DNA of 64,000 nucleotides from Dimorphilus gyrociliatus (GCA_904063045.1 CAJFCJ010000006.1:310001-374000); one strand, 5' to 3'. Numbered from the stretch's first letter, positions 24,450-60,748 are shown. Made by a program: numbers and translations. Notes: generated from the sequence alone by a model not told the origin.

Positions 24450-24639
24450 TCTTTTCTTATTACTGTTTATTATAATTGTACTCTTGTTAAGATGAAATTT
24501 TCTTACTTTTTTTGTTTTTGTTCTTGTAAACGAATGTTTTCCGAACTATACTTTTTCTTTTTCATTGAAGAATTAAATAGTCTTAAAATACTTTTAAGCG
24601 TAACTATGTTAAAGCTTGTTTTTATTAAGAAAGAAAATG

Positions 24640-35210: not shown

Positions 35211-36579
35211 GGCTCTCTTCATTCGATCTAGCAGAAGAAATTTCACAATAAATTTTCTCGAATTGTTCATCCTATTTTATCGTGAACACAGGGTTTTATA
35301 TGATTTAGAAAACAAAAATACACCCTAACAAGATATTAAAATGTTCAAGCAACTTTACAAAATAAAAAGTGTATATTTTATATATGCTTAAGTTACAAAT
35401 CCCTAAAAATATTATTAGTTAATTAAAGTTGAGTTTAGCAAGAAAGTTATGCACAAAAAGACGTACCATTTCTTATTCTTTACACTGATCTTTTCATATA
35501 AAACATTAAAATTCTTTTTAAATTGCTGAGATTACCGTATCTTTACTTTCTGTGAATTTTATGAAATTTGCTTTTAAATGTTATAAATAGACTATTTTTT
35601 CGGAAAAGAGAAAAAACCCATACGACGCAAATTTTAAAATTGTTAATTTAGAAAATGAAAATTTTTGTACGAAAGTAGATTAATTATGATCACTTCCTGG
35701 AAACGTCATTCGCGCCTAATTCAGCATCAACAATATTTATTCAAAGAAAGAAAAAAAACATTTCGCAAAGGTAGAGCTTTTTATGATTTTCTCCTAAATT
35801 ATGTTTATAAGATAGAAAATAATTAATAGTTTTTGGTTATTATAAAAGTTTACATATTTGTGCTTTTTTAATTATTAGAAATTAGAAAGCGTCTAATTAG
35901 CCACAGTATTAGGCTTCTTGTATTGTAATTTAATACTGTTGAAAAGGACGAAATTTAAACTTTGTTATTTTTGTGCGTATATATTTTGAATTTAGCGGCT
36001 ATTAAACAGCATTAGCTTAGTCGATCGCGATATATATAGAATTAATTTAATATTACCCAAAGCAAATTTGTACTGTCATACACGTTCAATATATGTGTAT
36101 TCAGTAATTCTGAATATTCAGTATCTTTTTACAACGACTTCTGAAAATAAAACCTTGTCAAAGCTATTGTGTATTTAATGATTATTGAAGAAATATACCA
36201 AGGCGTAGATTATTAAGGGGCTAACCTATCCCTTTTTCAGTTCATTCACAACAGTTAATGGAGTAGACTATGAAATCAACAAATGCAAAAAAAGTATGTA
36301 ATTTAACATCTCTCATTTGTGAATTAAATCTTAAAAATGCTTTTATAAACAGCTTCCTCAGTTGCCGAAAGTTCCTGTGACCGAGTTTGCAAGAAGTCCA
36401 AGCGATCGTTGGTGTTTTAGTTCGTTCGTTTAATAGATTAATCAATTAGCCTTTAAATTACAGTGTTTTGGTTAGAGAAGAGTAATACAGGAGCAGTTAA
36501 TGCATGTCGACAATTAACAAATGTAGGGTGCTGTTTATCTACTTTAATTATATTGTATGCGTATCTGTAATGTTGACAG

Positions 36580-39500: not shown

Positions 39501-42045
39501 AATTTACCATTTGAAATCTTTGGCAGATTAACAGATATTGATAAATATCCTTCTCTCAAGAGTTTACACCAGCAAGCTTTAGACTATATTCAATCGCAAA
39601 AGATATTTTTCTTACAGCCTTTATACGCTGTTCTAAAGACACCTAATGAATACCATCAAAAGACTTTCTACGGTCCGACACATGTACTTTTTGTGTCACA
39701 AGATCAATTCATATATACAATGACAAATAAAAAATATTTATCTATTTACGATATCGAAACTGACAACCTTGAACAAAAAACAACCATAAAAGTGGAACAA
39801 AAAGAATCAAATCTTATTCCAGGAAGGAAATCAAATTTTTTAATTATATCCTTTTTCTCACATCTGGATAAAATAAATCAATTAAAAGTTTGGAGTGGTG
39901 ATACAGGCATAAATGTTGTAGATTTTGAATTCAAAAAAGAATTTGAAGCATTAGATATTAGTAAGGATGAGAAGGTTTTAGCTGTTTGCACAATCAGCGA
40001 TATTGACCATCGAAAAGATGTCAAAAGCATTATGGGAGTCGACATTTTCTCGAAAGAGATTTTGTACAGAATACCAGTTGATAAGTACCATGAATCGGTC
40101 TCCAAAATAATTTTTCATCCCCAAAATTCTAACAGAATGATTTCAATTGGTAGTAGATTGAAGAAAAATATCCTTTTATGGGATCTTGAAACTGGAAAAC
40201 TATTGCAAGAATATTCCTGCGAGAATTTTCCTGAAGATGTATTTGTTTGCGGTAACAATATTGTTTGTGGAAATTCGACTTTTTGGTTATGTGTTATAGA
40301 TATTTCATCTAACGATTTGAAATCTAGTAGTTTTGACCAATTTGGCTCATATACTACAATGAACATATCGAACGATGGTAGTCTTATATGGGCTGCTACT
40401 GAAAACAATATTGTTTCTATCAAGTTAGACTTGGCTCTCTTAGATAAATTATCATTTTCTTCATCAATATCTTCGTTTAAATTTAATGATAAAGAAGAAT
40501 TTTTATTTATTGGTTATTTTAATGGAAATATGGATGTTTTCGATATAAAAACGAAGAAAACAATTTATAGTTGTTCACTTCATAATGATAAAATAACATC
40601 ATTCATTTCTCAGAATAATGTGTTATTTTCGGCTGGGCTTGATGGTCTTGTGCAGAAATTCTGCTTCGAAAGTCTTTTCCAAAAGAATACCGAGAAAGAT
40701 TCGTCAGATGTACAAACGAAAGACTTCGTCTCATGCACTGATATATCAGACGTGTTTTTTTCTGATAAACAAGCTTTGATAAGCTCAAAATCATTAAATT
40801 TACTACAGTATAACTACGAAAAAGGTATGTTAGTAGTAAAAATATCTTCCTAAACTGTTTCATATAATCTTCAACAGGTGAGATTATCAATAAATATCCG
40901 TGCCCCGAAGCTGTGCAAAGAGTGATTTTTGCGTATAAGGAAAGATTAATTATTGCACTTTGTGAGGGAGTAACAAAGGAGGAAGGGAACCATATAAAAG
41001 TATATCAGCCATTCTATGAATAATATAATTAAAAAATCGTTTTCAGATGTGGATGACCGAGAAAACAGAAACTCTTGAGTTTGAGGATCCTAAAATTTCT
41101 AAAAATGTATTAACTTTTACTTTAAATCCACAAGGAGATTCTCTACTGTTGCTTAACCAGGGTAAGTTTCACTTTTGTCTGTTCAATATACTTTAACTGT
41201 TGTCCTAACTTTAGACTTAGAGCTGCATTTAGTAGATCTCTTTGATAAAACTGTAAAGCTGTCCACCAAAATAACTCTACCCAACTTTAAGTCAATTGAG
41301 TTTGTTGGGTCAACAAATGGGGGTTCTGGAGAACCTCAAGAGTACTACGTAACACTTGGTTTCAAGTGTTTTCATGACACATTTACATCCTTCCTTACGT
41401 TGAAAATCACTTCAAATCAGATGCATTTAGTGTCTCAAGATAGACTAATTTTTGATATTCTATCAATGAAAAGTGTCTTAGTTTCTGAAGGAAAGATGCT
41501 AATTGGAAATATTCAAGGTTCCTTAATAGAAATTGACTTGGAAAGTCAAAAAGTAATTAACAGTTTGACTGATAAACAATTGTCAAAGCTCTTAAAACAG
41601 GGAAAAACAAAAAGTTTCAATTTAGTTGGAAGGCCCATTCATGACAATTGTATCACGAGTATAAAGATGAAAGGTGACTGGTTACTCACTGCATCATTGG
41701 ATAAAACTGTAAAAATATGGGATAAGACTTGTCAGAATTTGCTTGTACTCAAAACGAACTTTTTAGTTAGTATTAAGTAGTAATTTATATTTTTTTATTA
41801 ATTAATTAATTCCTTAACAGGTGGAAGATGTATACGTGGACGCAAAGAAAAAGCATCTTGTAGCAGTGCATAAAAATGGTCTCCTCGGTTTGTACAATAT
41901 TGAATCTGGAGAGCTACTTTTTGAAAGTAGTTTAGAGGGGGAATGCAAAAATTTAATATGGACCGATAATGCTTTTGCTGCATTTTCTACAACTGAGAGT
42001 GTATCTGAAGGAAGAGTCGGATTTTTCAAGTCGATTGAAGCCTAA
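36580..42045 (+). CDS. NWD1/NWD2-like STAND NTPase: N-terminal DUF4062-like domain, NACHT, WD40 repeats; first exon uncertain
   Basis: Motifs VRIFLASDF/DMKDERNIIWE...VDLYWG, Walker A IIYGREGFGKS, VIVRYLGQTSSS and Walker B FLLFDGI. Helical region PPILWTAIR..L, FNFEWL; WD repeats (ILLWDLETGKLL, HNDKITS, LLTASLDKTVKIWD). Confidence 0.85.
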
Positions 42046-42413
42046 AGTTCCATTAATCAGTTCTTTTTCTTTGATATAAATACACACTGTAAATATGTAT
42101 CAATGATCAGATGTAACGTATCTTTCCTGCAATATAATGTTTTAAATGGAATATTCAGATCTGATTTTGTTAACATATTTTATAAAACTACAAACAAAAC
42201 TTCTATCCCTAGTTATTAAGGTCTTGTGAGGTACTCGTCTCACCCAAAAAGTTTAAAATATATTTTAATTATTTATCTGGATTAATTTGTTGAAAAGATC
42301 TTAAATTAGTTATCTCTTACTTTCAATCGAGATGGGAAATGCTTTATAACTAATAATTTATGAGAATACATTTGTACTCATTCCTTAATTTATTCGCAAC
42401 ATACGAAAATTAT

Positions 42414-43061
<648 letters not shown>

Positions 43062-43289: not shown

Positions 43290-46200
43290 ATGACGGAAAC
43301 GGCTGAAGGAGAACAGCATCAACCGACTACACAATCTGTAGTTGAAACGTCGGTTTTCGCTAATTATATTAAGCGAGCTGTTCAATTACATCTGGAGGAT
43401 GGTGATGACACACCGGCAAGTCTGAATTCAATTTTGAAGGAACAAGCTACTTTGGAAACTCTAAGAAAGTTTCTAAGTGATGCTCAAGCACCCGTCTTAT
43501 TTATTGAAAGAATCATTAGCAAAGGTTTAACAAAATAATCATAAAAAGACTTCATAGAAATTTTGTATTTTATAGATGAGGGAGAGGAAGAAGAAGAGGA
43601 GAAGGAGGTTGCATATAACATACATACTGATGTTCACTATACGAATAATAAAGTGAATAGGTTTGTTGAACATTGATTTTCACAGATGTTTTATTCATCA
43701 AGAGCCAGCAGTAGGCACATTGGTTCAAGCATCATATCTGAAAACGTGCTGACACGAACATTTTTGTCTGGCCATATTTTGGCTCTATTTTCAAATCAAC
43801 TAACATCAGAACATAATTTTAAGTTGTACTCAGTCACAAAACATATAGCTAGACTTTGGAGCATAATATTTGCTTCAGTGCAACCTCAAAAACCGAACGT
43901 CATCATTCAAAGATGAACTTATAGAATTTTATTGCATAAGTATACTTACTTTATCGAGTTACTGTCTAACAAAAACTACATAGCCAACAAATAATCATGT
44001 TTTTTATAAAAGAAAATTAAATTTATCGAACAATCAATAACGCGCTTGCTTTTTAAGCATATTCAAAAAAGCACAATCATTAACTTTAACGCATCTGACG
44101 AAATATTAATTAAATTATTCTGACTATTAAAATTATAAGTCAATAAATCCATTATATGTTAAATTGTTTCGTGTGACCAATACCATTATGAATTACTTCG
44201 TTTATCTAATCTTTTGAGGATAAGACTGAGGAAATTTTTTTGGTTTCAGGCGTCTATCTGCGTTTTATCTAAGAATATGATTATTGAATAGATTTTATAT
44301 AATTTTCACTAATTACCTATTTTCTCAAACAGCCTCTTGGTTATGAAAAGAGGAATAAGCGTTGAAGCCGATAAACCCCTGTCGACTCAATTAGTACTCA
44401 TTGACTTACCTGAGGGATCACCATATGAAAATTTGCATGCAATTGTGACTAATGCAGTATCACCTTTCTTCAAATCTTTCATAAGGAGTACGGGAAAAGC
44501 TGACCGAGATGGGGATAAGATTGCACCATCCGTGGAAAAAAAATTGGCTGAGGTTGAAATGGGTCTTCTTCATTTGCAACAAAATATTGATATACCTGAA
44601 ATAACTCTGGTCATACATCCTAATGTCTACCAAATGATAAAAAAGGCCACTGATGAAGGAAGAAGAGCAAAGGTAGCAGATTTCGGGGATAAAGTAGAAG
44701 ACGCAAATTTCTTAAATCAGTTACAGAGCGGAGTAAATAGATGGATTCGAGAAATTCAAAAAGTATGTCAATACAAATTTCGTATACTAAGTTAATAGTG
44801 ATTGTTTTAATAGGTTACGAAATTAGACCGTGATCCCGCTTCGGGAACTGCCTTACAGGAAATTAGCTTTTGGTTAAATTTGGAAAGAGCTCTTTTAAGA
44901 ATTCAAGAAAAAAGAGAAAGTATAGATATCACACTGACTTTAGATATTCTAAAACATGGAAAACGATTCCACGCAACTGTATCTTTCGATACTGACACTG
45001 GATTGAAACAAGCTTTAGCAACTGTAAATGATTATAATCCTCTAATGAAGGATTTTCCTTTAAATGATCTTCTATCGGCAACGGAACTTGATAAAATACG
45101 GGCAGCTGTACAACTAATATTCAATCATTTACGTAAAATAAAAAACACGAAATATCCTATTCAAAGAGCTTTACGACTTGTTGAGGCTATATCTAGAGAT
45201 TTGTTGAATCAGTTACTTAAAGTGCTTGGCACACGCCGTCTGATGCATATTGCTTTCGAAGAATACGAGAAAGTGATGAATGCTAGTTTTGAAGTTTTCT
45301 CTACATGGGATGATGAATACGAGAAACTGCAAGGTTTGTTAAGAGATATAATTAAGAAAAAGAGGGATGAAAGTATGAAAATGGTTTGGAGAGTAAGTCC
45401 TGCTCATAAGCGCCTCCAGGCAAGGCTGGATGAGATGAGAAAATTCCGCCATCAGCACGAGCAGCTACGGCAAGTTATTGTTAGAGTTTTGAGACCTGCA
45501 CCTATACCAAGCACTCAAGATGAAGAAAAGGACATGAAAACTGCTGATAAACCCATGCTCCTTGACGCTTCTGATGCAAATGCAATGGAGGTAAGATTAA
45601 CGAGTTTTACTGGAAGAAATTTAACGAGAGTTATATTTTTATTTTAGGAAGTTCATCTTGCATACGAAAGTGTCAAAGTTATTGACTGCCTCGATGTTTC
45701 TTTAGAAGGAACTGACGCTTGGGAAGGTGCTATTAAGCGGTAAGCTTACTTATCTTAAGCATATGGAATATATATATAAATCAATTTTAAAAACTCCAGA
45801 TATGATGAAAGAATTGATCGCGTAGAAACCCGCATCACTGCTCGATTACGTGACCAGCTTGGCACAGCTAAAAATGCCAATGAGATGTTTAGAATCTTCT
45901 CTCGGTTTAATGCTCTATTTGTTCGACCGCATATACGAGGAGCTATCAGAGAATACCAAACTCAACTCATTCAAAGAGTTAAAGATGATATTGAGAACTT
46001 GCATGATAAATTTAAGAGTCAGTACTCTGGCTCTAAGGACTGCCGAATGTCTCGTGTTCGAGATTTACCTCCTGTGTCTGGATCAATTATTTGGGCTCGA
46101 CAAATTGAACATCAATTGGACGCATACATGCGTAGAGTCGAAGATGTATTAGGAAAAGGATGGGAAAATCACGTTGAAGGGCAAAAGCTTAAGGGTGATG

Positions 46201-49200
46201 GTGATTCCTTTAGACAGAAACTCAATACTCAAGCACTATTTGAAGATTGGTCGAAGAAAGTCCAGCAGAAACAATTGAGTGTAACAGGAAGAATTTTTGC
46301 TATTGAAACTATTCGAGCTAGAACTGCCAGTGCCAAGAGTGTTTTGAAATTGAGAGTAAGTTTCCTGTTAATTCCGTATAACCATTATGAGATATGATGT
46401 TAAGATTATTCCATTTGAGCACTAAGCCTGAAAAAACTTTCGTTCCAAACTTGTCTGATAGACTATTTATTTTTCGAAGAAATAATATATGAAACACATG
46501 TTTATAGTTATATCTGTATTTTAGGTAAACTTTCTACCGGAAATCATTACTCTCTCGAAAGAAGTCAGAAATTTAAAATGGCTTGGATTTCGTGTTCCGC
46601 TCACAACTGTCAACAAGGCTCATCAAGCCAATCAACTTTATCCCTTTGCCATATCTCTTATAGAAAACGTTCGTACATATGAACGCACAAATGATAAAGT
46701 TGATGAACGACCTTCGATTAGCCTTCTTGTTGCTGGAATGCGAAAAGAGGTTCAAGTACTTATTTCTGAAGGAATGTCAATGGTATGGGAATCATACAAA
46801 TTAGATCCCTATGTCCAACGGTATAGTATTTGCTATTTACTTTTTAGTAATTGTTGATTGATCGTACTTTTCTAGATTGGCCGAATCGATCGGTGCTTAC
46901 CAGGATAAAGTGGATGACTTGCTAGTTATAGATGAGCAAATAGATGCAGAAGTTAAATCTCTGGATCGCTGCCAATATTCACAGTCGTTCTTTTGCGAGA
47001 TTCTCAACAGAATTCAGAAGCTTGTAGACGATTTGAGCTTGCATCAGTACTCAAATCTGGCTTTATGGGTAAATAAACTAGACCAAGAAGTTGAGAAACG
47101 TTTGGCCAGCAGATTAGAGGCAGCTATTCAGGCGTGGACAAAATTATTGGCGGGTGGAGATAATGATGATGATATTGAAGAAAGTATGGATACAGATCAA
47201 CCGACTGTTTTCAAAAGAGGAGGAAATCCACACATAAGAAGCATTGTGCATGAATTAAGAATTACCAACCAAGTAATGTACTTGAGCCCCAGTGTAGAAG
47301 AAGCAAAAGCACATATTTACGACGAATTTCAAGTTTGGATTAGTGTTGCTTTAAAATTACCAAGAATCCGTCATTCTCGATATCAAGTGGGATTTGAACA
47401 AAGTGAATCAGAAGGTGAAAAAACTTACCGACACCTTATGCGTCACCTTCCTGAAGGAATGGTTTCTGTTCAGCAGTCTTATTCTGCTATTGAGAAATTA
47501 ATTGATCAGCTGGTTGATTATATCAATCAATGGTTTCGCTATCAAAAATTGTGGGATAGAAATCCTGATGAATTGTACGACATGCTGGGTACAAAAATGC
47601 CAAGCTGGATGAAAACTGTTGAATCAATTAAAGAGTTCAGAAAGACTTTTGATACTTCGGAAAATAGAAAAAATTTGGGTCCAATAATTGTGGATTTTGG
47701 AAAAGTACAATCTAAAGTTACACTTAAGTATGACTCTTGGCATAAGGATGTCCTCAGCAAATTTGGCCAATTGTTGGGTAGCAACATGCAAGATTTTTAT
47801 CAAAATGTTTCAAAATCAAGGGCAGATCTTGAATTACAGTCAATTGAAACTGCGAACACAAGTGATGCTGTAAATCTCATTACTCATGTGCAGGGGCTTA
47901 AGAGAAAGATAAGGTAGGTAATTAAACGTGAAATTTCATAAGACATATATCAGTTCTTGTTCACAGAACTATGGAGAAAGAAGTCGAAATGTTTAAGGAC
48001 GGTCAAAGGTTGTTAGAGCGTCAACGCTTTCAATTTCCTTCATCCTGGTTATACATTGATAATATTGAGGGTGAATGGGGTGCCTTTAACGATATGATGA
48101 GAAGAAAGGACAGTGCCATTCAATCTCAAGTAGCTTCTCTACAAATGAAAATTGTATCGCAAGATAAGACTATTGAAAGTCAGACAACTAGCATTTTAGC
48201 AGAATGGGAAAAGGAAAAGCCTGTGGAAGGTAATTTGCAGCCATCAGATGCCGTGAATGCACTAGCGATTTTCGAAGGAAAGTTGATGAGACTGAAAGAG
48301 GAACGAGATAATGTTGCTAAAGCTAAAGAAGCTTTGGAACTTGCAGAACCAGGAACTTTGAGTATGAGCGACGAAAGAATGCAAGTAGCTTTAGAGGAGC
48401 TTCAAGACCTAAAAGGTGTTTGGAGCGAACTAGGAAAAATTTGGGAAAGAATTGATGAAATGAAGGAGAAACTTTGGCTTTCGGTTCAACCCAGAAAGTT
48501 AAGACAGCAAATTGATGGATTACTAAATGATTTAAAGGATCTACCAGCAAGGTTATCCAATGTTATATCTAAAATTATTGAATATTTTAATATATTTTTT
48601 CTTTTAGATTGCGGCAGTACGCCTCATTTGAGCATGTTAAAAAAACGCTACAAGGATACGCAAAAGTTAATTTACTTATTGTTGAGCTTAAGTCTGAAGC
48701 TATTAAAGAACGACACTGGAAGATGCTTATGAAAAGACTCCGCGTATCTTGGATTTTGCCAGAACTAGCATTGGGACAGCTATGGGATTCTAACCTGCTA
48801 AGGAATGAAACAGCAGTTAAAGATGTTCTTTTAGTCGCTCAAGGAGAAATGGCTTTAGAAGTGTTCTTAAAACAAGTTGCTGGCATCTGGAAAACATATG
48901 AACTTGAACTAACAAACTTTCAAAATAAATGTCAGTTAATTAAAGGATGGGATGATCTATTTAATAAAGTGAAAGAGCATATAAACAGTGTCACCGCAAT
49001 GAAAATGTCCCCATATTACAAAGAATTTGAGGAAGAAGCACTGGCCTGGGAGGATAAATTGAACAGAATCAATACTCTCTTTGACGTTTGGATCGATGTT
49101 CAACGACGATGGGTCTACTTGGAAGGAATATTTTCAGGTTCTGCCGACATTAAAACTCTACTGCCAGTGGAGACAAATAAATTTGCCAGCGTTAGCACTG

Positions 49201-52200
49201 AATTTCTAGCTCTAATGAAAAAGGTTAGCAAATCGCCTTTGATAATGGATGTGTTGAACATTGCTAATGTTCTAAGGCAATTAGAAAGGCTAGCCGATCT
49301 TTTGTGTAAAATTCAAAAAGCACTTGGAGAATATTTAGAAAGGGAACGTGCTTCGTTTCCACGATTTTATTTTGTTGGAGATGAAGACTTGTTAGAAATT
49401 ATAGGAAATAGTAAAAATATCGGTAGATTGCAGAAACATTTTAAGAAAATGTTCGCAGGTGTTTATGCATTATTATTAAGCGATGATGAATTGTTCATAA
49501 ATGGATTGGCTTCAAAAGAAGGTGAAGAGGTATATTTTACTAAACCAATTAACCTGAAAGAATTTCCCAAAATCAACGAGTGGTTAACGGAAGTGGAAAG
49601 GCAAATGCGTCTTACTCTTGCTGGACAGTTGGCTGATGCTGTCTCAAAAGTTAACGCATTTAAAACATCAGAGATCAAGCAAGAAAATTATTTGCAATGG
49701 GTAGACGCTTATCAAGCGCAGCTAGTTGTCTTGGCAGCGCAAATTTCTTGGTCAGAAAGCACAGAAGCTGCATTAGCTGCTGATAAGAGCTCATTGGATT
49801 CGGTTTTAGGAAATGTTGATGCAACGTTAACAGTTTTAGCAGACTCAGTACTTCACGAACAACCCCCTGTAAGAAGAAGAAAATTGGAACACTTAATTAC
49901 AGAATTAGTCCATCAAAGAGATGTCACAAGAAATTTAATTTCTCATAAAGTTGAATCTGTTAAGTCGTTTGATTGGCTACAACAAATGCGTTTTTACTTT
50001 GATCCAAAGCAAAAAGATGTTCTGAAACGTTTAACCATTCACATGGCCAATGCAAAATTCCACTATGGTTTTGAATATCTTGGCATTCAAGACAAGCTTG
50101 TACAAACCCCGCTAACAGACAGATGCTATCTTACTATGACCCAAGCACTTGAAGCCAGATTGGGAGGGAGTCCATTTGGTCCGGCTGGTACTGGAAAAAC
50201 AGAATCCGTTAAAGCTCTTGGAAACCAGTTGGGCAGATTTGTTCTTGTATTTAATTGTGACGAAACTTTTGACTTCCAAGCCATGGGAAGAATTTTTATT
50301 GGACTGTGTCAGGTTGGCGCTTGGGGATGTTTTGATGAATTCAATCGACTTGAAGAGCGAATGTTGTCAGCTGTGTCCCAACAAATTCAAACTATACAGG
50401 AAGCCTTAAAAGAAAACTTAGGCACTGGAGACGAATCAAAAAAATCGCTTTCTATTGAACTTATTGGGAAACAAGTCAGGGTTAGCTCTGACATGGCTAT
50501 ATTCATTACTATGAATCCTGGCTATGCAGGGCGCTCTAATCTACCAGATAATTTGAAAAAATTATTTAGATCGCTTGCTATGACACAACCAGATCGGCAA
50601 CTGATTGCTCAGGTTATGTTGTATAGCCAAGGTTTCAGATCAGCTGAAAAGTTATCAAACAAAATTGTACCTTTCTTCAAACTATGCGATGAACAGCTAT
50701 CTCCCCAGTCGCATTATGATTTTGGTTTGAGAGCTTTGAAATCTGTCCTTGTGTCCGCCGGAAATGTTAAACGAGAAAGAATAGCAAGAGTTAAACAAGA
50801 ATTAGAAGCTGAGGGGGAAACCATAGATGACGTAGTTGTCTCGAATAGATTAAATGAGCAGGAAATTTTAATTCAATCGGTTATGGAAACAATGGTTCCT
50901 AAGCTGGTAGCTGAAGATATACCACTATTAAATTCGCTGTTGTCAGATGTTTTCCCGGGTGTAAAATATAACCCTGTTGAGATGAAACAACTCAGAACTG
51001 AAATAAGAAAAGTTTGTGAAAGTATGCATTTATCCTATGGTGAAGGTGAAGAAAGTGGCTCAACTTGGATCGAAAAAGTTCTTCAACTTTACCAGATTAC
51101 CCAGCTGCATCATGGATTGATGATGGTAGGACCAAGTGGATCAGGAAAATCAATGGCATGGAAAGTCTTACTACAAGCTTTGCAAAAGCTAGAAGGAGTT
51201 GAAGGTGTGGCTCATGTGATTGATCCTAAGTCTATTTCAAAAGATGCTCTTTACGGAAGTTTGGACCCTAATACAAGAGAATGGACTGATGGGTTATTTA
51301 CACATGTACTAAGAAAAATCATAGACAATGTTAGAGGAGAAATTGGTAAACGCCAATGGATTATTTTCGATGGGGATGTCGATCCTGAGTGGGTTGAAAA
51401 TTTAAATTCTGTTTTAGATGATAACAAACTACTAACGTTGCCCAACGGTGAAAGATTAGGTATTCCACCAAATGTTCGGATAATGTTTGAAGTTCAGGAT
51501 TTACGATATGCAACATTAGCAACAGTTTCCAGATGCGGTATGGTTTGGTTTAGCGAAGACGTCCTCACAACAGAAATGATATTTGAAAACTACTTAACAA
51601 AACTACACAAAGTACCTATCGATGAATCAGAGGAGGAGCCGAGAGCGTTAGGAAGTGGAGGTAATGAGGAAGACTTGTCACCAAGCTTGCGTGTACAAAG
51701 AGATTGCGGCACCATTTTAAATCCATATTTTGGATCTGGCGGTTTGATAATGAAATGTTTAGAATATGCATCATCTCTTGAACATATTATGGACTTCACT
51801 CGACTTCGAGTATTAGGATCACTTTTTAGCATGTTAAATCAATGCATTAGAAACGTTCAATCTTATAATTATACTCATTCTGACTTCCCAATGCCTTATG
51901 AAGATTTAGAAAAATATATCCCTAAATGCTTGATTTATGCCATTTTATGGAGTTTCTCTGGGGATGGTAAATTAAAAGTTAGACAACAGCTTGGAGAATA
52001 TATTAGAAGTGTAACAACAGTACCTTTACCATCTTCAAGTCATGATATCATTGATTACGAAGTCACACTACCAGCTGGAGAATGGCAACCTTGGGCTAGT
52101 AGAGTGCCACAGATTGAGGTGGAAACTCACAAAGTAGGCGCTCCAGATGTTGTTGTTCCAACAATCGACACAGTCAGACACGAATCTCTTTTATATACAT

Positions 52201-55200
52201 GGTTGGCTGAACACAAACCTCTTGTTCTCTGTGGACCCCCAGGTTCAGGTAAAACTATGACGCTTTTCTCAGCTTTGAGAGCACTCCCAGAGCTCGAGGT
52301 TGTTGGCTTGAATTTCTCGTCTGCCACAACACCTGAATTAATGTTGAAAACATTTGATCATTATTGTGAATATCGTAAAACACCAAATGGAGTTGTTTTA
52401 AGTCCTCTACAGCTTAACAAATGGTTGGTTTTGTTTTGTGACGAAATAAATTTGCCAGATATGGATAAATATGGAACTCAGCGAATCATTTCCTTTTTGA
52501 GACAGATGGTGGAGCATGGAGGTTTTTATAATACAAATGATCAGACATGGGTTCGTTTCGAAAGAATCCAGTTTGTTGGTGCATGCAATCCTCCAACAGA
52601 TCCTGGACGAAAGCCATTATCTCATAGATTCTTACGTCATGTTCCTGTCGTTTATGTGGATTATCCCGGAAAAGTATCTCTTATGCAAATCTATGGTACT
52701 TTCAACCGAGCAATGTTACGACTTGTGCCTGTTTTAAGATCTTACGCTGATCCACTCACTCAATCTATGGTTGAATTATATACTATGTGCCAAGAGAGGT
52801 TTACGCAAGATATGCAACCCCATTATATATACAGTCCTAGAGAAATGACAAGATGGGTTAGAGGTATATGTGAAGCTTTGAAACATTTAGAGACATTGGC
52901 CATTGAAGGATTAGTTAGAATATGGGCTCATGAGGCATTGAGGTTATTTCATGATCGTTTAGTAACAGAGGAAGAAAGAATTTGGATGATTGAACAAATA
53001 GATTCGGTTGCTATTCAGCAATTTCCGAATTTTGACAAAAATTCAGCTTTAGCGAAACCAATCTTATACTCAAATTGGTTAAGCAAAGATTATGTCCCTG
53101 TTGAACAAGAGGAACTTAGAGAATATGTAAAAGCTAGGCTAAAGGTGTTTTATGAGGAAGAGTTAGACGTGCCATTGGTTCTATTTAATGAAGTTTTGGA
53201 TCATGTTCTACGGATTGATCGAATTTTCAAACAACCTCAGGGCCATTTGCTATTAATTGGAGTTAGTGGAGCTGGAAAAACGACTCTTTCTCGATTTGTT
53301 GCCTGGATGAATGGCTTAACAGTATTCCAAGTCAAAGTGCATAATAAGTACACAGCTGATGACTTCGACGAGGATCTCAGAAATGTTCTTAGAAGAAGTG
53401 GAACCAAAGGGGAAAAAATCTGTTTTATCATGGATGAATCCAATGTTTTAGATTCGTCTTTCTTAGAACGAATGAATACTCTACTAGCTAATGGAGAAGT
53501 TCCCGGTTTGTTTGAAGGTGATGAACTCACGACACTCATGACTCAATGTAAAGAGGGCTCTCAAAAAGATGGTAAGATGCTAGACAGTCATGAAGAATTA
53601 TACAAGTGGTTCACTCAGCAAGTCATGTACAACTTACATGTTGTATTTACCATGAACCCATCTTCGGAAGGTTTAAAAGACAGAGCTGCAACATCTCCTG
53701 CTTTATTCAATAGGTAAGCTTGAAATAGTTTAATATATTACGATGTCTCCCTCATTGAGAAACGACTTTGCATGTATATTCTGTGCAATATCGTGGTTTA
53801 AGGGGAGTAAATTAAAAGCCTGTTTTCAAATTAAGTTTTCATTTATTTTTTTTTGAAAATGACTTTTGAGATTAAGCTACAAAATATTTCAGATGCGTAT
53901 TGAACTGGTTTGGTGACTGGAGCAAAGAAGCCTTCTATCAAGTTGGAAAGGAATTTACATGCAAAGTCGATTTGGACAACCCAAAATATTTGGCTCCTGA
54001 CTATTTACCTTTGGCTTATGAAAATTTACCACAGCCTCCAACTCATAGAGATGTCGTTGTCAATGCTTTTGTGTTTGTCCACCAAACTCTACACAGAGCA
54101 AATGAAAGAGTAGCTAAAAGGGGAGGCAGAACAATGGCAATAACTCCCAGACACTTTTTGGATTTTATAAATCATTATGTTAAATTAACAAGAGAAAAAA
54201 GGACAGATTTGGAGGAACAGCAACTTCATTTAAATGTCGGTTTGCAAAAGATTAGAGATACTGTTAAACAAGTGGAAGATCTTCAAAAAAGTCTATCCAG
54301 TAAGAGAATAGAATTGGAAAATAAGAATCAAGCAGCGAATGCTAAATTAAAGCAAATGGTGAAGGATCAACAAGAAGCAGAGAGGAAAAAAGTTACATCT
54401 CAAGAATTAGAAGCTGCACTAAAAGCGCAGACTAAAGTTATTGGGGAGAAGCAAAGTGCTGTCAAAGCAGATTTGGCTCAAGTGGAGCCAGCAGTTTTAG
54501 ATGCTCAACAAGGTTTGTAGTACTCCTATAAATTTAATTACATATTTTATTATCTCGCGAATATCTTGAAAAGTATGGTTTATAGCATAACGTCACAACG
54601 TGACAATGAAAAAACGATAGTTTTAAAGGTTTTATTATAAATATTATTCTCAAGTGGATAAGGAAAATAACTTTTTTAACACTTAAAAATGATTTTATCA
54701 AAGAAACAGTGATGCAAATAGTACTTTATGTTAGTTTAAGCCTTCGCCGCTGAAAAAACTGTAGGAATTTTTGCGGAATACAATATACAATTGTATTCTA
54801 TTTAGCCGTAAAGGGTATAAAGAAACAGAATCTAGTCGAGCTTCGAGGATTTTCCAACCCACCCCAACTAGTTAAGGTCTGCATGGAATCTATCATGACA
54901 CTTTTGGGAGAAGGAGATGTTGACTGGAAGTCTATACGATCTATGGTTATGCGAGAAAATTTCATAACGACCATCGTTAATTTTAATACAGAAGATATTA
55001 CGTAAGCTATAAACATTCGCGTTTAGGCCGTTAACTGTGCTTTCTCTGTTTGCTTAAAATTAAAAATTTTCGCTTCTTTAATGCTTAGTACTATATTTTA
55101 ATATTTAGCTGTCAAGTCCATAAAGCGTCAAAATTTAGTGGAAGTAAAATCGTTGTCAAATCCTCCTCCGCTGGTGAAATTGGCGCTGGAATCGATTTGT

Positions 55201-58200
55201 TTTCTTTTGGGTGAAGATACAACTGACTGGAAAGCAATAAGATCAATTATAATGAGAGACAATTTTATATCTACCATTGTTGGATTTGATGCTGAAAATT
55301 TGACGTAGGTTCCAGCATGTCGGTTTCAAATTTTACTGGTTGAGGAGGACTTAGATGTTTTTTTTTATTTAGATTGCATGCTTTCTGTTGTTTGATTTTC
55401 TTTCTGTCTTGTTTAAAGACATGAAAACTAATTACAATTATTTTCAGAGATGAAATAAGACAAAAAATGAAAACAAAATTCTTGACAAATCCAGACTATA
55501 GCTTTGAGAAAATGAATAGAGCCTCAGCTGCATGTGGGCCTATGGTTAAATGGGCTATTGCTCAGGTAAGCGAACATTTTTGTGTCTACAACATAATTTT
55601 TATACGTCATCATAATACTAGATTAACTATTCGGATATGTTGAATCGCATCGAACCTTTACGTAACGAGTTGGCATCTCTAGAACATGAAGCTTCAGAAA
55701 ACCGAAGCAAAGATGAGGAGGTGAAAAATTTGATTGCCGAACTGGAGAAATCCATTGCTAAATATAAGGAAGAATATGCACATCTTATATCTGAGGCTCA
55801 GGCCATAAAAGCAGATTTGAGTGCTGTTGAAACAAAAGTGGAGAGATCTGTAGCTCTTTTAAAATCTTTATCCTCAGAAAAAGAACGATGGGAAGCTGGC
55901 AGCGAGACATTTAAAGCTCAAATGTCTACAATAGTTGGAGATGTGCTCCTCTCATCGGCATTTATGGCTTACGCTGGCTACTTTGATCAACATATGAGAG
56001 AAAGCCTGTTCCATACATGGGTTGGGCATTTACAACAAGCCAATATACAATTTCGACAAGATTTAGCAAGAATAGAATACTTGTCAAACGCTGATGACAG
56101 ATTAAAATGGCAAGCTAATTCTTTGCCATCCGATGATTTATGTACCGAGAATGCCATAATGCTGAATAGGTTTGCTTTCCAAAATAAATCCGTATGTGAT
56201 ATATAACTAAGTTTTGTATTACAGATTCAATAGATATCCTCTTATTATCGACCCTTCAGGCCAAGCTACAGAATTTATTATGAACTTGTATTCAGACAAA
56301 AAAATAACAAAAACATCATTTTTGGATGATTCCTTCCGAAAGCATTTGGAATCAGCTTTAAGATTTGGAAATCCTCTACTTGTACAAGACGTAGAGAATT
56401 ATGATCCAATTTTGAATCCTGTTTTAAATAGAGAATTAAGAAAAACTGGTGGTCGGGTGCTGATTACAATTGGAGATCAGGACATAGATTTGTCTCCAAG
56501 TTTCACTATTTTCCTTTCATCTAGAGATCCAACAGTAGAATTTCCACCTGATATATGCTCCAGAGTAACTTTCGTTAACTTTACAGTAAGTTGGTAAAAT
56601 TACAAACTAGTTATTTAATTAAACATATTCTCTAAATAAAGGTAACTCGTCACTCTTTACAATCCCAATGTCTGAATACTGTACTTAAAGCTGAGAGGCC
56701 AGACGTTGATGAGAAGAGGTCTGACCTTTTGAAATTGCAAGGCGAATTCCGTTTGCGATTAAGGCAGCTGGAAAAGAGTTTGTTGACGGCTTTGAATGAA
56801 GTTAAAGGTAGAATTTTGGACGATGATTCCATAATTTCTCATCTTGAGATGCTGAAGAAGGAAGCTGGTGAAATTGCTAGAAAAGTGGAGGAAACGGATG
56901 TGATTATGGCAGAGGTCGAAACTGTTTCAGCACAATATGTCCCTCTAGCCCAGTCATGTTCATCTATTTATTTTACTTTGGAGTCACTAAATCAGATACA
57001 TTTCTTGTATCAATATTCTCTCCACTTCTTCTTTGATATTTTTAATGCCGTTCTAGATAGTAGTCGTCTGAATGGAATTAAAGAATATGATAAGAGATTG
57101 AAAATTATCACCGATAACCTGTTCAAAATTACTTATGAAAGAGTGGCTAGGGGAATGCTTCATGTTGATAGAATTGCTTTGTCAGTTTTACTCTCCAGGA
57201 TTCATCTCAAGCAGTCTGCAACGTAAGAATCTATTATTTTTTGTTTAATATTTGTTTTTTAAGTAATTAATCAAATTAGTTTTGAATAGCAATAACTAAA
57301 TTTGATAAATGTTATTTTAATCGTTTGAAATTGTTTTCTCGTTTTTTTATAACTTACTAAAACAGTATTGAATTTATGGACAACGAAGAAAAGATCAGGT
57401 AGACAAACTATTCTGGGTTTATTTCTTTTATTGCTTAAACCTATATTCTAACATCCTTGCTCTCCATTCTTACTCCAAAGCCTCTATTCTCCACAACGCA
57501 CATTGGAGGAACCTAAATATCAATATTCGCATTTGTTTTGTGCTATTTTGTATTATCAAAATTGCTGGATCTTAGGTAAAATGTTTAGATATATATTACC
57601 TTTATCTAAGGTCCTTTATAATTTTGATGCGTAATGTAACGGCTTGGAAGGATTTTTTGTTTTACGTGGCTACAAAGACACTCTTGCTCTACTAAATCTT
57701 TATTAAAGGCAGAAAATAACTTTTCAGCTCTGCTTTGTATATCCCTCTTAAAATAATTATATATCAATACGTTAATCAGAAGTTTGAATACTAATAATCC
57801 CTTTCAAAAAAAATTTTACTTATCAAATCTCTGGAAAGAAAAACTATTCGAAACTTTTTTCAATGAATCTAACATAATATCTGTTTTATTTCAGCGAAAC
57901 GACTTACGAAAGAGAATGGCAGCATCTATTACGCGGAGCCGAAGCCATGATAGGTCAAACTAATATTCCGCAAATTCCTGGACTATCAGCCGTTCAATGT
58001 GAAGGAGTAGCAAAGCTATCTCGGCTTCAAGCATTTAAAGAAGTATCTAAAACTATTTCCAACAACCCAGATGTAGGGGCATGGCTTGAAACAATTTCAC
58101 CAGAGCATTGTGTACCATGTCTCTGGCAGGGAGATGAAAAGCTAACACCTATCGGACGATCAATTCATGAACTATTGGCCATTCAAGGGCTTAGGCCAGA

Positions 58201-60748
58201 TAGGTATGTTGCATTAAAAATTTGGTTTATTTTTGGTTTAAAATGTCCATAATATAACTAATTCATAAATATTAATTACTAGACTATTGGCAGCAACACA
58301 TTTGTTTGTAAATGCTGTCTTGGGAGAGGACTTTATGGCTTCTGCAGAATCAGAGATGGATATGGCTCTTGTTATTGAAAAGGAAGTTAAAGCATCTACC
58401 CCAATATTACTCTGCTCTGTTACAGGCTATGATGCATCTGGAAGAGTAGACGATTTAGCAGCTGAATTGAATAAACAGCTAACTTCCATTGCTATCGGAT
58501 CCGCAGAAGGATTTTCTCTTGCAGACAGGGCAATAAGCTCTGCGTCCAAATCTGGGCGTTGGGTACTACTGAAAAATGTTCATCTCGCTCCACAATGGCT
58601 CTTCCAATTAGAGAAACGTTTGCATTCTTTGACTCCTCACGCTAATTTCAGACTATTTTTAACTATGGAAATTAACCCGAAACTTCCTGTAAATCTATTG
58701 AGATCCGGTAGAATATTCGTATTCGAGCCACCACCTGGTGTGAAAGCGTCCTTACTTAGAACGTTTTCCTCTCTTTCCGCTAACCGAATGTGCAAAGCTC
58801 CATCAGAGAGAGCCAGATTATATTTCTTATTGGCATGGCTTCATGCTATTGTTGGGGAACGCTTACGATACGCTCCCCTTGGATGGAGCAAAAAGTAAGC
58901 CGGTGTATTCTTTTCTGCTCACAATTACATCTCTTTTTTTTTAGATACGAATTCAATGAGTCCGATTTGCGCTGCGCCTCAGATACCATTGATACCTGGT
59001 TAGATTCCGTAGCAATGGGAAGAACTAACTTACCCCCCGAAAAGATTCCTTGGGACGCTCTGAGAACCCTCCTGGCCCAATGCATCTACGGAGGAAAGAT
59101 AGACAACGAATTCGATCAGAGATTACTCACTACTTTCCTGAAGAATACTTTCACAGCAGAAACGTTCAATCCCGATTATCCACTTGTGATGGACGTAGAT
59201 GGAGTACAAGGAAAGAAAATCATCATGCCTGATGCTGTTCAAAGAGATGGATTTGTGAACTGGGTTGAGCAAATGCCAGTACAGCAAACACCGTCATGGC
59301 TTGGCTTACCAAATAATGCTGAAAAAGTTCTATTAACAACGAGAGCAACAACTATGGTTGGAAATCTATTGAAAATGCAAATCTTAGAAGACGACGATGA
59401 TTTAGCATACTCTGGAGATAAGGAGAAGAAGGCAATTACAGATTCTCGGCCAGCTTGGATGAGAACACTTCACGCCAGCTTAAAAGCTTGGTCTAAATTG
59501 GTACCAAAGGTAAACCACTTACTGATATTTGAGAAGTCTTACTCAGAAAAAAATAGACATTCAATAACTTTTCTATTAGTAAGAAGTAAGATTAATGCAT
59601 TAGGTTCGAGTATTTTCAACGATTGTTTTTCAAAATCATCTATTATACAACGTTCATTTTATTATATTTCCACCAATAGTTGGTAAGTACAGGAAAAGGC
59701 AAGGGATTTTCTCCTTTGTTAATAACAGTACGCTACCGTTAATAAAAAAAGAGAGTCAAAGAAGATAATGTACTCTTATATTTAGTCAAAATTAACGGTT
59801 GTTTACATAGGTGTCTGGCTGTACAGGTTTATGTAGTAAATTATATCAATTTTATTTTCATTTTGAAATTTTCTTTCTACTTGAATATTCTTGAGGAAAA
59901 GTGTTTCGGTTAACAGTTCATTCTTTTCTCTCTGTAATTTTAATCGATTTAAATTTTAAGTTTTATTAATCATAAAATTTCTCTTTTAGTCCATAGCTTC
60001 GATGAAAAGAACTGCTGATAATATTAAGGATCCATTATTCCGATTCTTTGAAAGGGAAGTTAAAGCTGGAGCAAAGTTATTGACAGATGTCAGACGGGAT
60101 ATAGAGGAAGTTATGCTAATATGTGAAGGAGAAAAAAAACCAACGAACCATCACCGAGAACTCATGGCTGATTTAGCTAAAGGTGTTATACCAAATACTT
60201 GGAGTCGCTATACAGTTCCACCCGGATTAACCGTAATCCAATGGATTAGCGATTTCGCTGAGAGAGTAAAGCAATTATCAGCAATCGCTCAAGCGTCACT
60301 GGCGGGAAGCGGCGCCCTGAAAAACCACAATGTTTGGCTGGGCGGTCTCTTTATCCCCGAAGCCTATATTACAGCTACTAGGCAGTATGTTGCACAAGCG
60401 AACCAGTGGTCATTGGAGGAACTTCGTTTGAAAGTGAATGTTATGGAAAAGACTGATGGAGTACCAGCGGCAGATGCGTGTACATTTAGTGTGATAGGTT
60501 TACAGTTGATGGGCGCGAAATGTTCGGGAAGTTCGCTTCAACTGTCGTCAGCTATAAGTACAGATATGCCCCTTACTAGACTCACTTGGGAACGATCGAC
60601 AGGCGAGCAAACCACTGGTGTTACTCTTCCAGTTTACTTGAATGCAACTCGGTCGCATATATTGTTTACTGTGAATTTGGAAGCCTCCGGAAGTCATACT
60701 TTTTATGAAAGGGGTGTGGCAATTATTTCCTCGGTTCTGGGGTCATAA
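43290..60748 (+). CDS. DYNC1H1: Cytoplasmic dynein 1 heavy chain (about 4622 aa with one MTBD exon variant)
   Basis: Exons 43290-43524, 43576-43660, 44333-44762, 44814-45590, 45648-45739, 45800-46355, 46525-46820, 46876-47913, 47967-48551, 48608-53713, 53893-54512, [54806-55001 or 55109-55304], 55448-55565, 55622-56169, 56225-56585, 56642-57222, 57895-58203, 58283-58894, 58945-59509 and 59990-60748 total 13869 nt in frame. P-loops [24 protein letters not shown] and GVSGAGKT. Confidence 0.98.
54806..55001 (+). CDS. DYNC1H1: DYNC1H1 alternative MTBD exon A (196 nt)
   Basis: tttag|CC...ATTAC|gtaagc, phase 1 to phase 2. Encodes [66 protein letters not shown]. Confidence 0.88.
55109..55304 (+). 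CDS. DYNC1H1: DYNC1H1 alternative MTBD exon B (196 nt)
   Basis: tttag|CT...TTGAC|gtaggt, phase 1 to phase 2. Encodes [66 protein letters not shown], closer to the canonical dynein-1 sequence. Confidence 0.92.

What the first reader, a model, noticed from the sequence alone, without database searches (positions are those of the whole stretch)
54806..55304. Tandem mutually exclusive exons swap the microtubule-binding domain of cytoplasmic dynein-1
Seen: two homologous exons of identical length (196 nt) and identical phases (1 to 2), each with canonical AG/GT ends, 107 nt apart and stop-free. Because 196 is not a multiple of 3, including both or neither shifts the frame, so exactly one must be used. 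Established: this segment (human [53 protein letters not shown]) is the end of stalk CC1 plus MTBD helices H1-H4, and H1 and H3 contact tubulin. Exon B is canonical-like; exon A diverges in H1 (ELRGFS vs EVKSLS) and H3 (KSIRSMV vs KAIRSII). Inference: one gene yields two motors with different microtubule affinity, processivity or tubulin-code preference. I recall computational reports of mutually exclusive exon clusters in lophotrochozoan dynein heavy chains, so conservation and prior description need checking; functional consequences appear untested to my knowledge.
Basis: partly seen in the sequence, partly recalled or inferred. Interest (0 to 1): 0.87.

Follow-up and report, generated by a model that had tools for sequence, protein, structure and literature searches.

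The report
Two swappable track-gripping exons in dynein
This worm's main cargo-hauling motor, cytoplasmic dynein-1, has two alternative copies of the exon that builds the part gripping the microtubule track, and RNA uses one or the other; the same switch sits almost unremarked in molluscs, ribbon worms, flatworms, insects and ray-finned fishes.

Summary
Exon A (54806-55001) and exon B (55109-55304) are each 196 nt, run from phase 1 to phase 2, have AG/GT ends and lie 107 nt apart. They are 62% identical in both DNA and protein. Synonymous sites are saturated, so the duplication is old and both copies are under selection.

RNA contigs show all four predicted junctions. No contig joins A to B or skips both, and either outcome would shift the frame into a stop. 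So mutually exclusive use is supported. Three nuances:
- The more divergent exon A is the major form, with depth 459 against 87 for B.
- In the same-species run, the B contig keeps its downstream intron, which gives an immediate stop. A fully spliced B form was seen only in a close relative.
- Exon A is almost invariant at the DNA level in relatives (2/198 changes against 8.4% in neighbouring exons).

The pair is not unique. Same-sized tandem pairs occur at this site in a nemertean, an oyster, a termite, a pipefish and a bowfin. Gene models of flatworms, nematodes, a beetle, a moth and a sea spider contain both copies. A coral and a sea urchin have one copy.

A 2011 software paper predicted such an exon in Schistosoma dynein. 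I found no functional study. Different microtubule behaviour of the two forms remains an inference, because the main basic contact residues are kept in both.

The parts
43290..60748 (+). Cytoplasmic dynein-1 heavy chain gene (approximate coding extent in the window). It has few, very short (~55 nt) introns and one 1702-codon open stretch.
   Evidence: ORF list. The 1702-aa ORF is 78-80% identical to spiralian DHC1 proteins. Spliced RNA contigs cover 53000-57000.
53893..54512 (+). Constitutive upstream exon (stalk CC1). It ends with the first base of a split codon.
   Evidence: Translation. Joints 53711>53891 (cut +2) and 54510>54804 / 54510>55107 (cut +2) are in RNA contigs.
54806..55001 (+). 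Exon A (upstream copy). It encodes the end of CC1 plus MTBD H1-H4 and is the major form in RNA.
   Evidence: Joints 54512>54806 and 55001>55448 are present in four runs, with depth 459 in X7. Relatives show only 2/198 nt changes, both synonymous.
55002..55108 (+). Intron of 107 nt between the two alternative exons. It is longer than the ~55-nt introns this gene splices elsewhere, so steric exclusion is unlikely.
   Evidence: Introns of 55-56 nt are spliced in the same gene. No 55001>55109 joint is reported.
55109..55304 (+). Exon B (downstream copy). It encodes the same protein segment, has a more canonical sequence, and is the minor form in RNA.
   Evidence: Joint 54512>55109 is in X7 (depth 87) and X2. 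Joint 55304>55448 is in X2 only.
55305..55447 (+). Intron of 143 nt after exon B. It is retained in the B-containing contig of the same-species run, and reading through it gives an immediate stop.
   Evidence: X7 record 9 lies continuously on 55107-55477 after the 54510>55107 joint.
55111..55396 (+). Predicted long hairpin. The 5' half of exon B (55111-55193) pairs with the downstream intron (55308-55396), and the exon B donor site at 55305 sits between helices. This is a lead only.
   Evidence: Fold z-score is -2.45, with 0 of 100 shuffles as stable. Helix list and pair probabilities of 0.96-1.0 for UCCUCCUC/GAGGAGGA are. The structure is not seen in oyster, pipefish or nemertean.
55448..55565 (+). 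Constitutive downstream exon (rest of the MTBD). It accepts either A or B.
   Evidence: Translation. Joints 55001>55448, 55304>55448 and 55563>55620 (cut +2) are.

Best explanation
This is a genuine pair of mutually exclusive exons in the cytoplasmic dynein-1 heavy chain gene. An old tandem duplication of the 196-nt exon for the end of stalk CC1 and MTBD helices H1-H4 left two copies that share acceptor and donor phases.

The spliceosome joins the upstream exon to either A or B, and then to the common downstream exon. Because 196 is not a multiple of three, messages with both copies or neither run into early stops. They are presumably removed by nonsense-mediated decay (inferred). Only single-copy messages can make a motor.

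The result is two dynein-1 heavy chains identical except for 25 of 66 residues in H1-H4.
- **Shown:** the anatomy, the junctions, old age with purifying selection on both copies, and the same arrangement in many other animals.
- **Inferred:** the two forms differ in how the MTBD couples stalk registry to microtubule binding or behaves under load. Gross affinity is less likely to differ, because the main basic contact residues are kept in both.
- **Also inferred:** use of B in this species is held down at its donor site, possibly by an exon-intron hairpin.
For: - **Anatomy and frames:**
- **RNA junctions:** 54512>54806 and 55001>55448 are in four runs. 54512>55109 is in two runs. 55304>55448 is in one. 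X2 holds two 253-nt bubble contigs, one per exon, at depths 10.4 and 7.09.
- **Age and selection:** pS 0.77 (saturated) against dN 0.33, and no stops in either copy.
- **Same-sized tandem pairs with AG/GT ends at the same site:** Tubulanus, Crassostrea virginica, Zootermopsis, Syngnathus, one unnamed fish-like contig and Amia, where only the coding match was checked.
- **Both copies inside gene models:** Batillaria, Macrostomum, Echinostoma, Trichuris, Trichinella, Romanomermis, Nymphon, Spodoptera and Asbolus.
- **RefSeq isoform sets that differ only in this exon:** Zootermopsis and Ostrinia. In oysters the two exon types appear in Crassostrea gigas X11 and C. virginica X1.
- **Constraint on a second copy elsewhere:** the fish second copy gives dN 0.034 against dS 1.23 between two fishes.
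- **Deep origin of one pair:** mollusc and flatworm downstream copies form one clade with support 100/95.
- **Role of the swapped helices:** H1 is the moving helix and H3 makes salt bridges to beta-tubulin (PMC6629372, PMC7042235).
Against: - In the run identical to the window (X7), the only assembled B form retains the 143-nt downstream intron, and no 55304>55448 joint is reported there. A productive B mRNA is therefore not yet shown in this species itself.
- Two runs (X1, X3) assembled only A.
- Logan contigs drop rare variants. They cannot exclude A+B or skipped forms, and their depths are a poor measure of expression.
- No tissue or stage information was available.
- The basic residues known to contact tubulin are conserved in both exons, so a functional difference is not evident from sequence.
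- The tree of 64 columns cannot tell whether A and B descend from the old spiralian pair or from a later duplication (AU p 0.31 and 0.42).
Confidence: 0.8

Rival explanations
1. Exon B is used in this species mainly as a non-productive or gated choice. Choosing B leaves the next intron unspliced, which gives an immediate stop. B inclusion would then lower dynein output or park transcripts in the nucleus until a signal completes splicing, rather than supplying a second motor in bulk tissue.
For: - The X7 contig runs upstream exon, exon B, retained intron, downstream exon at depth 87, and X7 has no spliced B donor joint.
- There is a stop right after exon B when the intron is kept.
- The predicted hairpin flanks the B donor with helices: z -2.45, core pair probability about 1.
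Against: - Exon B keeps an open frame and canonical sites despite saturated synonymous divergence from A.
- The close relative X2 splices B cleanly at a depth similar to A.
- Orthologous downstream copies are coding and constrained in other phyla.
- The hairpin is not conserved in three other species.
- A single assembled path says little about the minor path.
Confidence: 0.13
2. One copy is a decaying relic of a duplication, a pseudo-exon that is spliced in only as noise.
For: A is far more abundant than B in the same-species run, and two runs assembled A only.
Against: - Both copies are stop-free and have intact AG/GT ends.
- dN is far below the saturated dS.
- Exon B has only 9/198 changes in relative X2 and is spliced correctly there.
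- The pair is kept in many phyla.
Confidence: 0.04
3. The duplication is an assembly artefact, such as collapsed haplotypes or a mis-joined repeat.
For: None found.
Against: - The copies are only 62% identical.
- Both are transcribed and spliced to the same neighbours in independent runs of several studies.
- DNA runs hold the whole 499-nt stretch.
Confidence: 0.01

Closest known systems
Predicted mutually exclusive exon in the Schistosoma mansoni cytoplasmic dynein heavy chain (SmDHC1), Pillmann et al. 2011, PMC3228551; cited again by Kollmar 2016, PMC5100056
   Same: It is in the same gene family. The exon pair has identical length, split codons at both ends and strong homology, and was judged mutually exclusive from a large DHC alignment. 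Other flatworm gene models (Echinostoma, Macrostomum) carry two copies of exactly this MTBD exon, so it is very probably the same cluster.
   Different: - The paper used it only as a software test case. It gives no exon identity beyond 'the middle of the gene', no RNA evidence and no structural or functional reading.
- I could not fetch the S. mansoni locus to prove it is the same exon.
- Here the pair is in an annelid-like worm, with junction evidence and a survey across phyla.
RefSeq/Gnomon isoform sets of cytoplasmic dynein 1 heavy chain in molluscs and insects (e.g. Crassostrea gigas X11 and C. virginica X1, Zootermopsis X6 vs X8, Ostrinia X2 vs X3)
   Same: The isoforms differ in the same 64-65 residues. 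The two exons lie in tandem at the same site with the same phases.
   Different: - These are automatic annotations without comment.
- The downstream copy in molluscs and flatworms has a distinctive 'KKD...KDSF' sequence that the worm's B lacks.
- The insect downstream copy is one codon longer.
Mutually exclusive exon clusters in muscle myosin heavy chain (Drosophila Mhc and other metazoans), PMC3912159
   Same: One motor gene swaps alternative copies of exons inside the motor domain to make isoforms. This is the best-known precedent for tuning a cytoskeletal motor by exon choice.
   Different: - It is a different motor, with several clusters per gene.
- Tissue-specific use and kinetic consequences have been measured for myosin (from my own knowledge, not re-checked here). 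Nothing of the kind has been measured for dynein.
Competing RNA-structure control of exclusive exon choice (docking and selector sites, as in Dscam and 14-3-3 zeta)
   Same: A long exon B-to-intron helix is predicted here and could bias exon choice.
   Different: - There is no docking/selector architecture. The whole cluster folds no better than shuffles (z -1.1).
- The helix is not conserved in other species.
- The frame rule plus decay is enough to explain exclusivity.

Membership tests
Mutually exclusive exon (MXE) cluster | Neighbouring internal exons that are homologous and encode the same part of the protein | tested here: met
   A and B are 62% identical in nt and aa, align without gaps, and both align to human DYNC1H1 3296-3359.
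Mutually exclusive exon (MXE) cluster | Same length class, same reading-frame phases and compatible splice sites | tested here: met
   Both are 196 nt, run from phase 1 to phase 2, and have AG acceptors and GT donors.
Mutually exclusive exon (MXE) cluster | Mature transcripts contain exactly one member of the cluster | tested here: inconclusive
   Single-inclusion junctions for A are in 4 runs. For B they are complete in X2 and cover the upstream side only in X7. No A-B or skipping joint is listed. However, assembled contigs drop rare forms, and the same-species B contig retains an intron.
Mutually exclusive exon (MXE) cluster | A mechanism that forbids double inclusion or skipping | tested here: met
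   Both or neither shifts the frame into stops within 110 and 13 codons. Removal by nonsense-mediated decay is inferred, not tested. Steric exclusion is unlikely, since the intron is 107 nt against 55-nt introns spliced nearby.
Mutually exclusive exon (MXE) cluster | Both copies maintained by selection or conserved in other species | tested here: met
   dN 0.33 against saturated dS. Pairs are present in a nemertean, an oyster, a termite and three fish assemblies. The fish downstream copy gives dN/dS about 0.03.
Cytoplasmic dynein-1 heavy chain (DYNC1H1 / DHC1) microtubule-binding domain | Sequence membership of the gene and of this segment | tested here: met
   The flanking 1702-aa ORF is 76-80% identical to named DHC1 proteins. 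The exon peptide's best PDB matches are mouse and human dynein-1 MTBD structures at E about 1e-21.
Cytoplasmic dynein-1 heavy chain (DYNC1H1 / DHC1) microtubule-binding domain | Basic tubulin-contact residues of H1 and H3 (mouse K3298, K3299, K3334, R3337, R3342) | tested here: met
   Exon positions 5, 6, 41, 44 and 49 are K/R in both A and B. Residue roles are taken from PMC6125590, PMC6629372 and PMC7042235. Position 13 (mouse R3306) is also basic in both, but its contact role is from my memory of Redwine 2012, not from a paper read here.
Ancient spiralian pair (upstream 'T-type' and downstream copy) | Worm A orthologous to the upstream copies of molluscs, nemerteans and flatworms, and B to their downstream copies | tested here: inconclusive
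   - The order is the same, and the signature '(T/V/M)LLGE-x-(D/E)-(L/V/P)-(D/E)-W' is shared by A, mollusc and nemertean upstream copies.
- A's nearest rows are mostly spiralian upstream copies.
- AU tests reject neither this grouping (p 0.31) nor A and B as sisters (p 0.42).
- B lacks the 'KKD' signature of mollusc and flatworm downstream copies.

The most novel reading that the evidence does not exclude
The MTBD-exon switch is an old and widely kept (or repeatedly re-invented) way for animals to make two kinds of cytoplasmic dynein-1 from one gene. The two kinds would differ in how helix H1 and the H2-H4 core couple stalk registry to microtubule binding, and so in load response, pausing or preference for particular microtubule populations. 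The switch reaches from annelids, molluscs, flatworms, insects and nematodes to ray-finned fishes, yet has escaped the dynein field. In this worm the divergent copy A is the housekeeping form. B would be a gated form whose donor site is hidden in an exon-intron hairpin and released only in certain cells.
Probability: 0.3. Interest if true: 0.8.

Novelty: new member of a known kind. Interest (0 to 1): 0.6.

Why it matters
Cytoplasmic dynein-1 is usually treated as a single motor whose many jobs are sorted out by adaptors and regulators. A conserved, frame-locked choice between two versions of the microtubule-binding helices would add a second layer: motors that differ at the track itself.

Point mutations in the MTBD are already known to give context-specific defects under load. 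An example is Drosophila S3372C (PMC10418259). Modest sequence differences here could therefore matter.

The pair also exists in tractable animals: oysters, insects and ray-finned fishes. The idea can be tested directly with exon-specific knockouts and with purified MTBD or whole-motor constructs.

For this genome, it is one more case where a very compact genome has kept an alternative exon pair despite heavy intron loss. That argues the pair is needed.

Tried and rejected
1. **Docking/selector RNA structure across the cluster.** The fold of 54500-55460 has z -1.1. The inverted-repeat list shows only short AT-rich matches apart from the exon B-intron helix. Rejected as a general mechanism.
2. 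**RNA structure or a known RNA family to explain the DNA-level conservation of exon A.** The exon A fold has z +0.6. Rfam gives no credible match, only PinT at E 0.46. The conservation remains unexplained.
3. **Conservation of the exon B-intron hairpin.** Oyster z -1.5, pipefish z -0.1, nemertean z +0.9. Not conserved, so kept only as a species-specific lead.
4. **Short-fragment protein search with exon A.** The best hit was only 70% identical, so no A orthologues were found. The hits are single-exon ORFs from other eukaryotes and show that the exon borders are old.
5. **Representative search with exon A.** It gave mostly fragments. It was useful only for P0021 (a fish-like tandem pair) and a full-length handle (P0111).
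6. **Tree and AU tests.** With 64 columns they cannot decide between an ancient and a lineage-specific origin of the worm's pair.
7. **Loci not on record.** Lineus, Nematostella, Acanthaster and Conger.
I used the fold tool instead.
9. **No named annelid DHC1** appeared in either full-length search, so no second annelid could be checked.
10. **Paper searches** found no functional or structural study of alternative MTBD exons in dynein-1.
Full report
**1. What is in the sequence.**

The + strand from about 43290 to 60748 encodes a cytoplasmic dynein-1 heavy chain. It has few introns, and those are very short. Its 1702-codon open stretch is 76-80% identical to named DHC1 proteins of molluscs, nemerteans and other animals.

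At the place flagged, the layout is as follows:
- The stalk exon ends at 54512, with G as the first base of a split codon, followed by GT.
- Exon A runs 54806-55001.
- Exon B runs 55109-55304.
- The next exon starts at 55448.

Each alternative exon is 196 nt, is preceded by AG and followed by GT, enters in phase 1 and leaves in phase 2. The exons lie 107 nt apart. Their translations are open. They align without gaps to human DYNC1H1 residues 3296-3359, with mouse and human MTBD structures as best PDB matches at E about 1e-21. This segment is the end of CC1 plus helices H1-H4.

A and B share 122/196 bases and 41/66 residues. The proportion of synonymous differences is 0.77, which is saturated. 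dN is 0.33. The duplication is therefore old, and neither copy has drifted as a neutral sequence would. Joining both exons, or neither, shifts the frame and gives stops within 110 and 13 codons.

**2. Is it used as an either/or choice?**

I had one call to lay public runs on 53000-57000. These runs are stored as assembled contigs, so they show presence but not absence.

| Run | Relation to the window | What it shows |
|---|---|---|
| X7 | No differences from the window | Joints 54512>54806 and 55001>55448 at word depth 459; joint 54512>55109 at depth 87 |
| X1 | RNA from a coral tank metatranscriptome, over 99% alike | A 5.2-kb spliced contig with exon A only |
| X2 | Close relative, 95-99% alike | Two 253-nt contigs, upstream-A-downstream (depth 10.4) and upstream-B-downstream (depth 7.09), the bubble expected from exclusive exons; includes joint 55304>55448 |
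| X3 | More distant relative, about 92% alike | The A form only |

No joint 55001>55109 (both exons) or 54512>55448 (neither) was listed.

Two caveats matter.
- First, the canonical-looking B is the minor form. The divergent A is the major one in every run.
- Second, the X7 contig that holds B continues without a break through the 143-nt intron 55305-55447 into the next exon. Reading through gives a stop immediately after exon B. In the species of the window itself, a productive B message is therefore not yet shown. It is shown only in the relative X2.

**3. Two unexpected details.**

*(a) Exon A is almost frozen at the DNA level.* X3 has 2 changes in 198 letters of exon A. The four exons that follow have 117 changes in 1386 letters (Fisher p 2e-5). 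X2 carries the same two changes, both synonymous (54900, 54904), while its exon B has 9/198. The changes listed in the neighbouring exons fall mostly three bases apart in one codon position, taken to be the third. So synonymous sites of exon A are under extra constraint. I found no RNA structure (z +0.6) and no known RNA family to explain it. Splicing-control sequences inside the exon are the ordinary guess, but this remains unexplained.

*(b) Exon B with its downstream intron folds better than shuffles* (z -2.45, 0 of 100 shuffles as stable).
- The 5' half of exon B (55111-55193) pairs with intron 55308-55396.
- The helices include UCCUCCUC/GAGGAGGA, with pair probability near 1.
- The B donor at 55305 lies between two helices that cover positions -9 to -1 and +4 to +12.

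This would fit the retained intron, but it is one sequence and one prediction. The equivalent regions of an oyster, a pipefish and a nemertean show nothing similar. The cluster as a whole folds no better than chance (z -1.1). I therefore reject a docking/selector mechanism. The frame rule, with decay of misjoined messages (inferred), is enough to explain exclusivity. The 107-nt middle intron is twice the size of introns this gene splices routinely, so steric exclusion is unlikely.

**4. How widespread is it?**

A region-limited search with a full-length dynein as handle returned hundreds of named DHC1 proteins.

Several gene models score too high because they contain two copies of this exon in a row. 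These are Batillaria (snail), Macrostomum and Echinostoma (flatworms), Trichuris, Trichinella and Romanomermis (nematodes), Nymphon (sea spider), Spodoptera and Asbolus (insects).

RefSeq isoform sets differ in just these 64-65 residues. Examples are Zootermopsis X6 against X8 and Ostrinia X2 against X3. In oysters the two exon types appear in Crassostrea gigas X11 and C. virginica X1.

I fetched loci and found tandem pairs at the same site:

| Species | First copy | Second copy |
|---|---|---|
| Tubulanus (nemertean) | 35873-36068 | 36397-36592 |
| Crassostrea virginica (oyster) | 24596-24791 | 25021-25216 |
| Zootermopsis (termite) | 40985-41180 | 42257-42455 (199 nt) |
| Unnamed fish-like contig, GCA_002895965.2 | 1037-1232 | 1416-1611 |
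| Syngnathus (pipefish) | 15489-15684 | 15784-15979 |
| Amia (bowfin), coding match only | 22965-23156 | 23562-23753 |

Except in Amia, where I checked only the coding match, the pairs have AG/GT ends and 196-nt exons (199 nt for the termite's second copy).

The second fish copy is under strong purifying selection: dN 0.034 against dS 1.23 between two fishes. A coral (Pocillopora) and a sea urchin have a single copy.

**5. One origin or many?**

In molluscs, the nemertean and flatworms, the upstream copy shares the signature '(T/V/M)LLGE-x-(D/E)-(L/V/P)-(D/E)-W...MRENFI' with the worm's A. The downstream copies of molluscs and flatworms form a clade with support 100/95. That pair therefore predates the split of those phyla. 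By parsimony it should have been present in the ancestor of this worm.

But 64 columns cannot settle the worm's own copies. AU tests reject neither 'A with the spiralian upstream copies' (p 0.31) nor 'A and B as sisters' (p 0.42). B also lacks the 'KKD...KDSF' signature. Whether the insect, nematode and fish pairs share that origin is open.

**6. What it probably does.**

- H1 is the one helix that moves when the MTBD binds, passing the change in stalk registry (PMC6629372).
- H3 supplies salt bridges to beta-tubulin (PMC7042235).
- The basic residues named in those studies and in PMC6125590 are mouse K3298, K3299, K3334, R3337 and R3342, at exon positions 5, 6, 41, 44 and 49. Position 13 (mouse R3306) is included from my memory of Redwine 2012. 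All six positions are K or R in both A and B.
- The 25 differences lie at the end of H1 (LRGF against VKSL), in the H2 core (VCM...MT against LAL...CF), in the H2-H3 loop (GDV against DTT), beside the H3 arginines (MV against II) and in H4.

I therefore think a change in coupling or load behaviour is more likely than a plain change in affinity. This is inference only.

**7. Prior knowledge.**

Pillmann et al. 2011 (PMC3228551) used a predicted mutually exclusive exon 'in the middle' of the Schistosoma mansoni DHC1 gene as a test case. It had equal length and split codons at both ends. Kollmar 2016 (PMC5100056) mentions it in passing. The flatworm models above make it very likely that this is the same exon, but I could not fetch that locus. 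Searches of the paper library found no functional, structural or expression study of alternative MTBD exons in dynein-1.

**8. The organism.**

A note by another agent of this scan names the genome as the small annelid Dimorphilus gyrociliatus. That fits the tiny introns, the spiralian affinities and the aquarium metatranscriptome hit, but I did not verify it. The same scan has flagged many other exclusive exon pairs in this genome. The dynein pair is thus one of a retained set.

**9. Verdict.**

- The exclusive-exon reading is well supported. The open point is whether B is productively spliced in this species.
- The functional reading is plausible but untested.
- The kind of feature is known from a 2011 prediction and from automatic isoform annotation, so this is a new member of a known kind.
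- New here are the junction evidence, the dominance of the divergent copy, the retained intron and possible hairpin at B, the frozen DNA sequence of A, and the breadth of the pair up to ray-finned fishes.

Noticed in passing
L007:15784-15979, L008:23562-23753, L001:1416-1611: Ray-finned fishes (pipefish, bowfin and one unnamed assembly) carry a second, tandem copy of the dynein-1 MTBD exon. In the pipefish and the unnamed contig it is 196 nt with AG/GT ends; in the bowfin only the coding match was checked. The copy is 87-92% identical in protein between fishes, with dN/dS about 0.03. No listed fish protein model uses it. It looks like an unannotated alternative exon of vertebrate dync1h1.
   Followed up: partly
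proteins P0022, P0023, P0024, P0068: These non-dynein proteins of 750-1630 aa are built from 5 to 20 tandem repeats of an MTBD-like module. One repeat motif, FSNPPQLVK, is identical to exon A. Their origin and function are unknown to me.
   Followed up: no
window 54806-55001 compared with runs X2 and X3: Exon A differs by only two synonymous bases from relatives whose neighbouring exons differ by 4-9%. Neither a predicted RNA structure nor any Rfam family accounts for this.
   Followed up: partly
window 54798-55016, minus strand: A 72-codon open frame lies antisense to the whole of exon A. It is probably a by-product of the coding strand, but it coincides with the stretch of extreme DNA conservation.
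   Followed up: no
window 48609-53717: A single uninterrupted 1702-codon exon covers most of AAA1-AAA4 of dynein, and the remaining introns are about 55 nt. Intron loss has been heavy here, yet the alternative exon pair and its introns were kept.
   Followed up: no
window 37584-42045 (+) and 42414-42659 (-): Upstream neighbours are a large protein that looks like a P-loop NTPase with WD40-like repeats, judged by eye from the ORF translation only. On the other strand there is an exon that looks like ribosomal protein S17.
   Followed up: no
proteins P0001-P0020: Single-exon ORFs from metagenomic eukaryote contigs begin and end exactly at the borders of this exon (AVKGIKKQ...NFNTEDIT). The two intron positions flanking the MTBD exon are therefore very old.
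   Followed up: no
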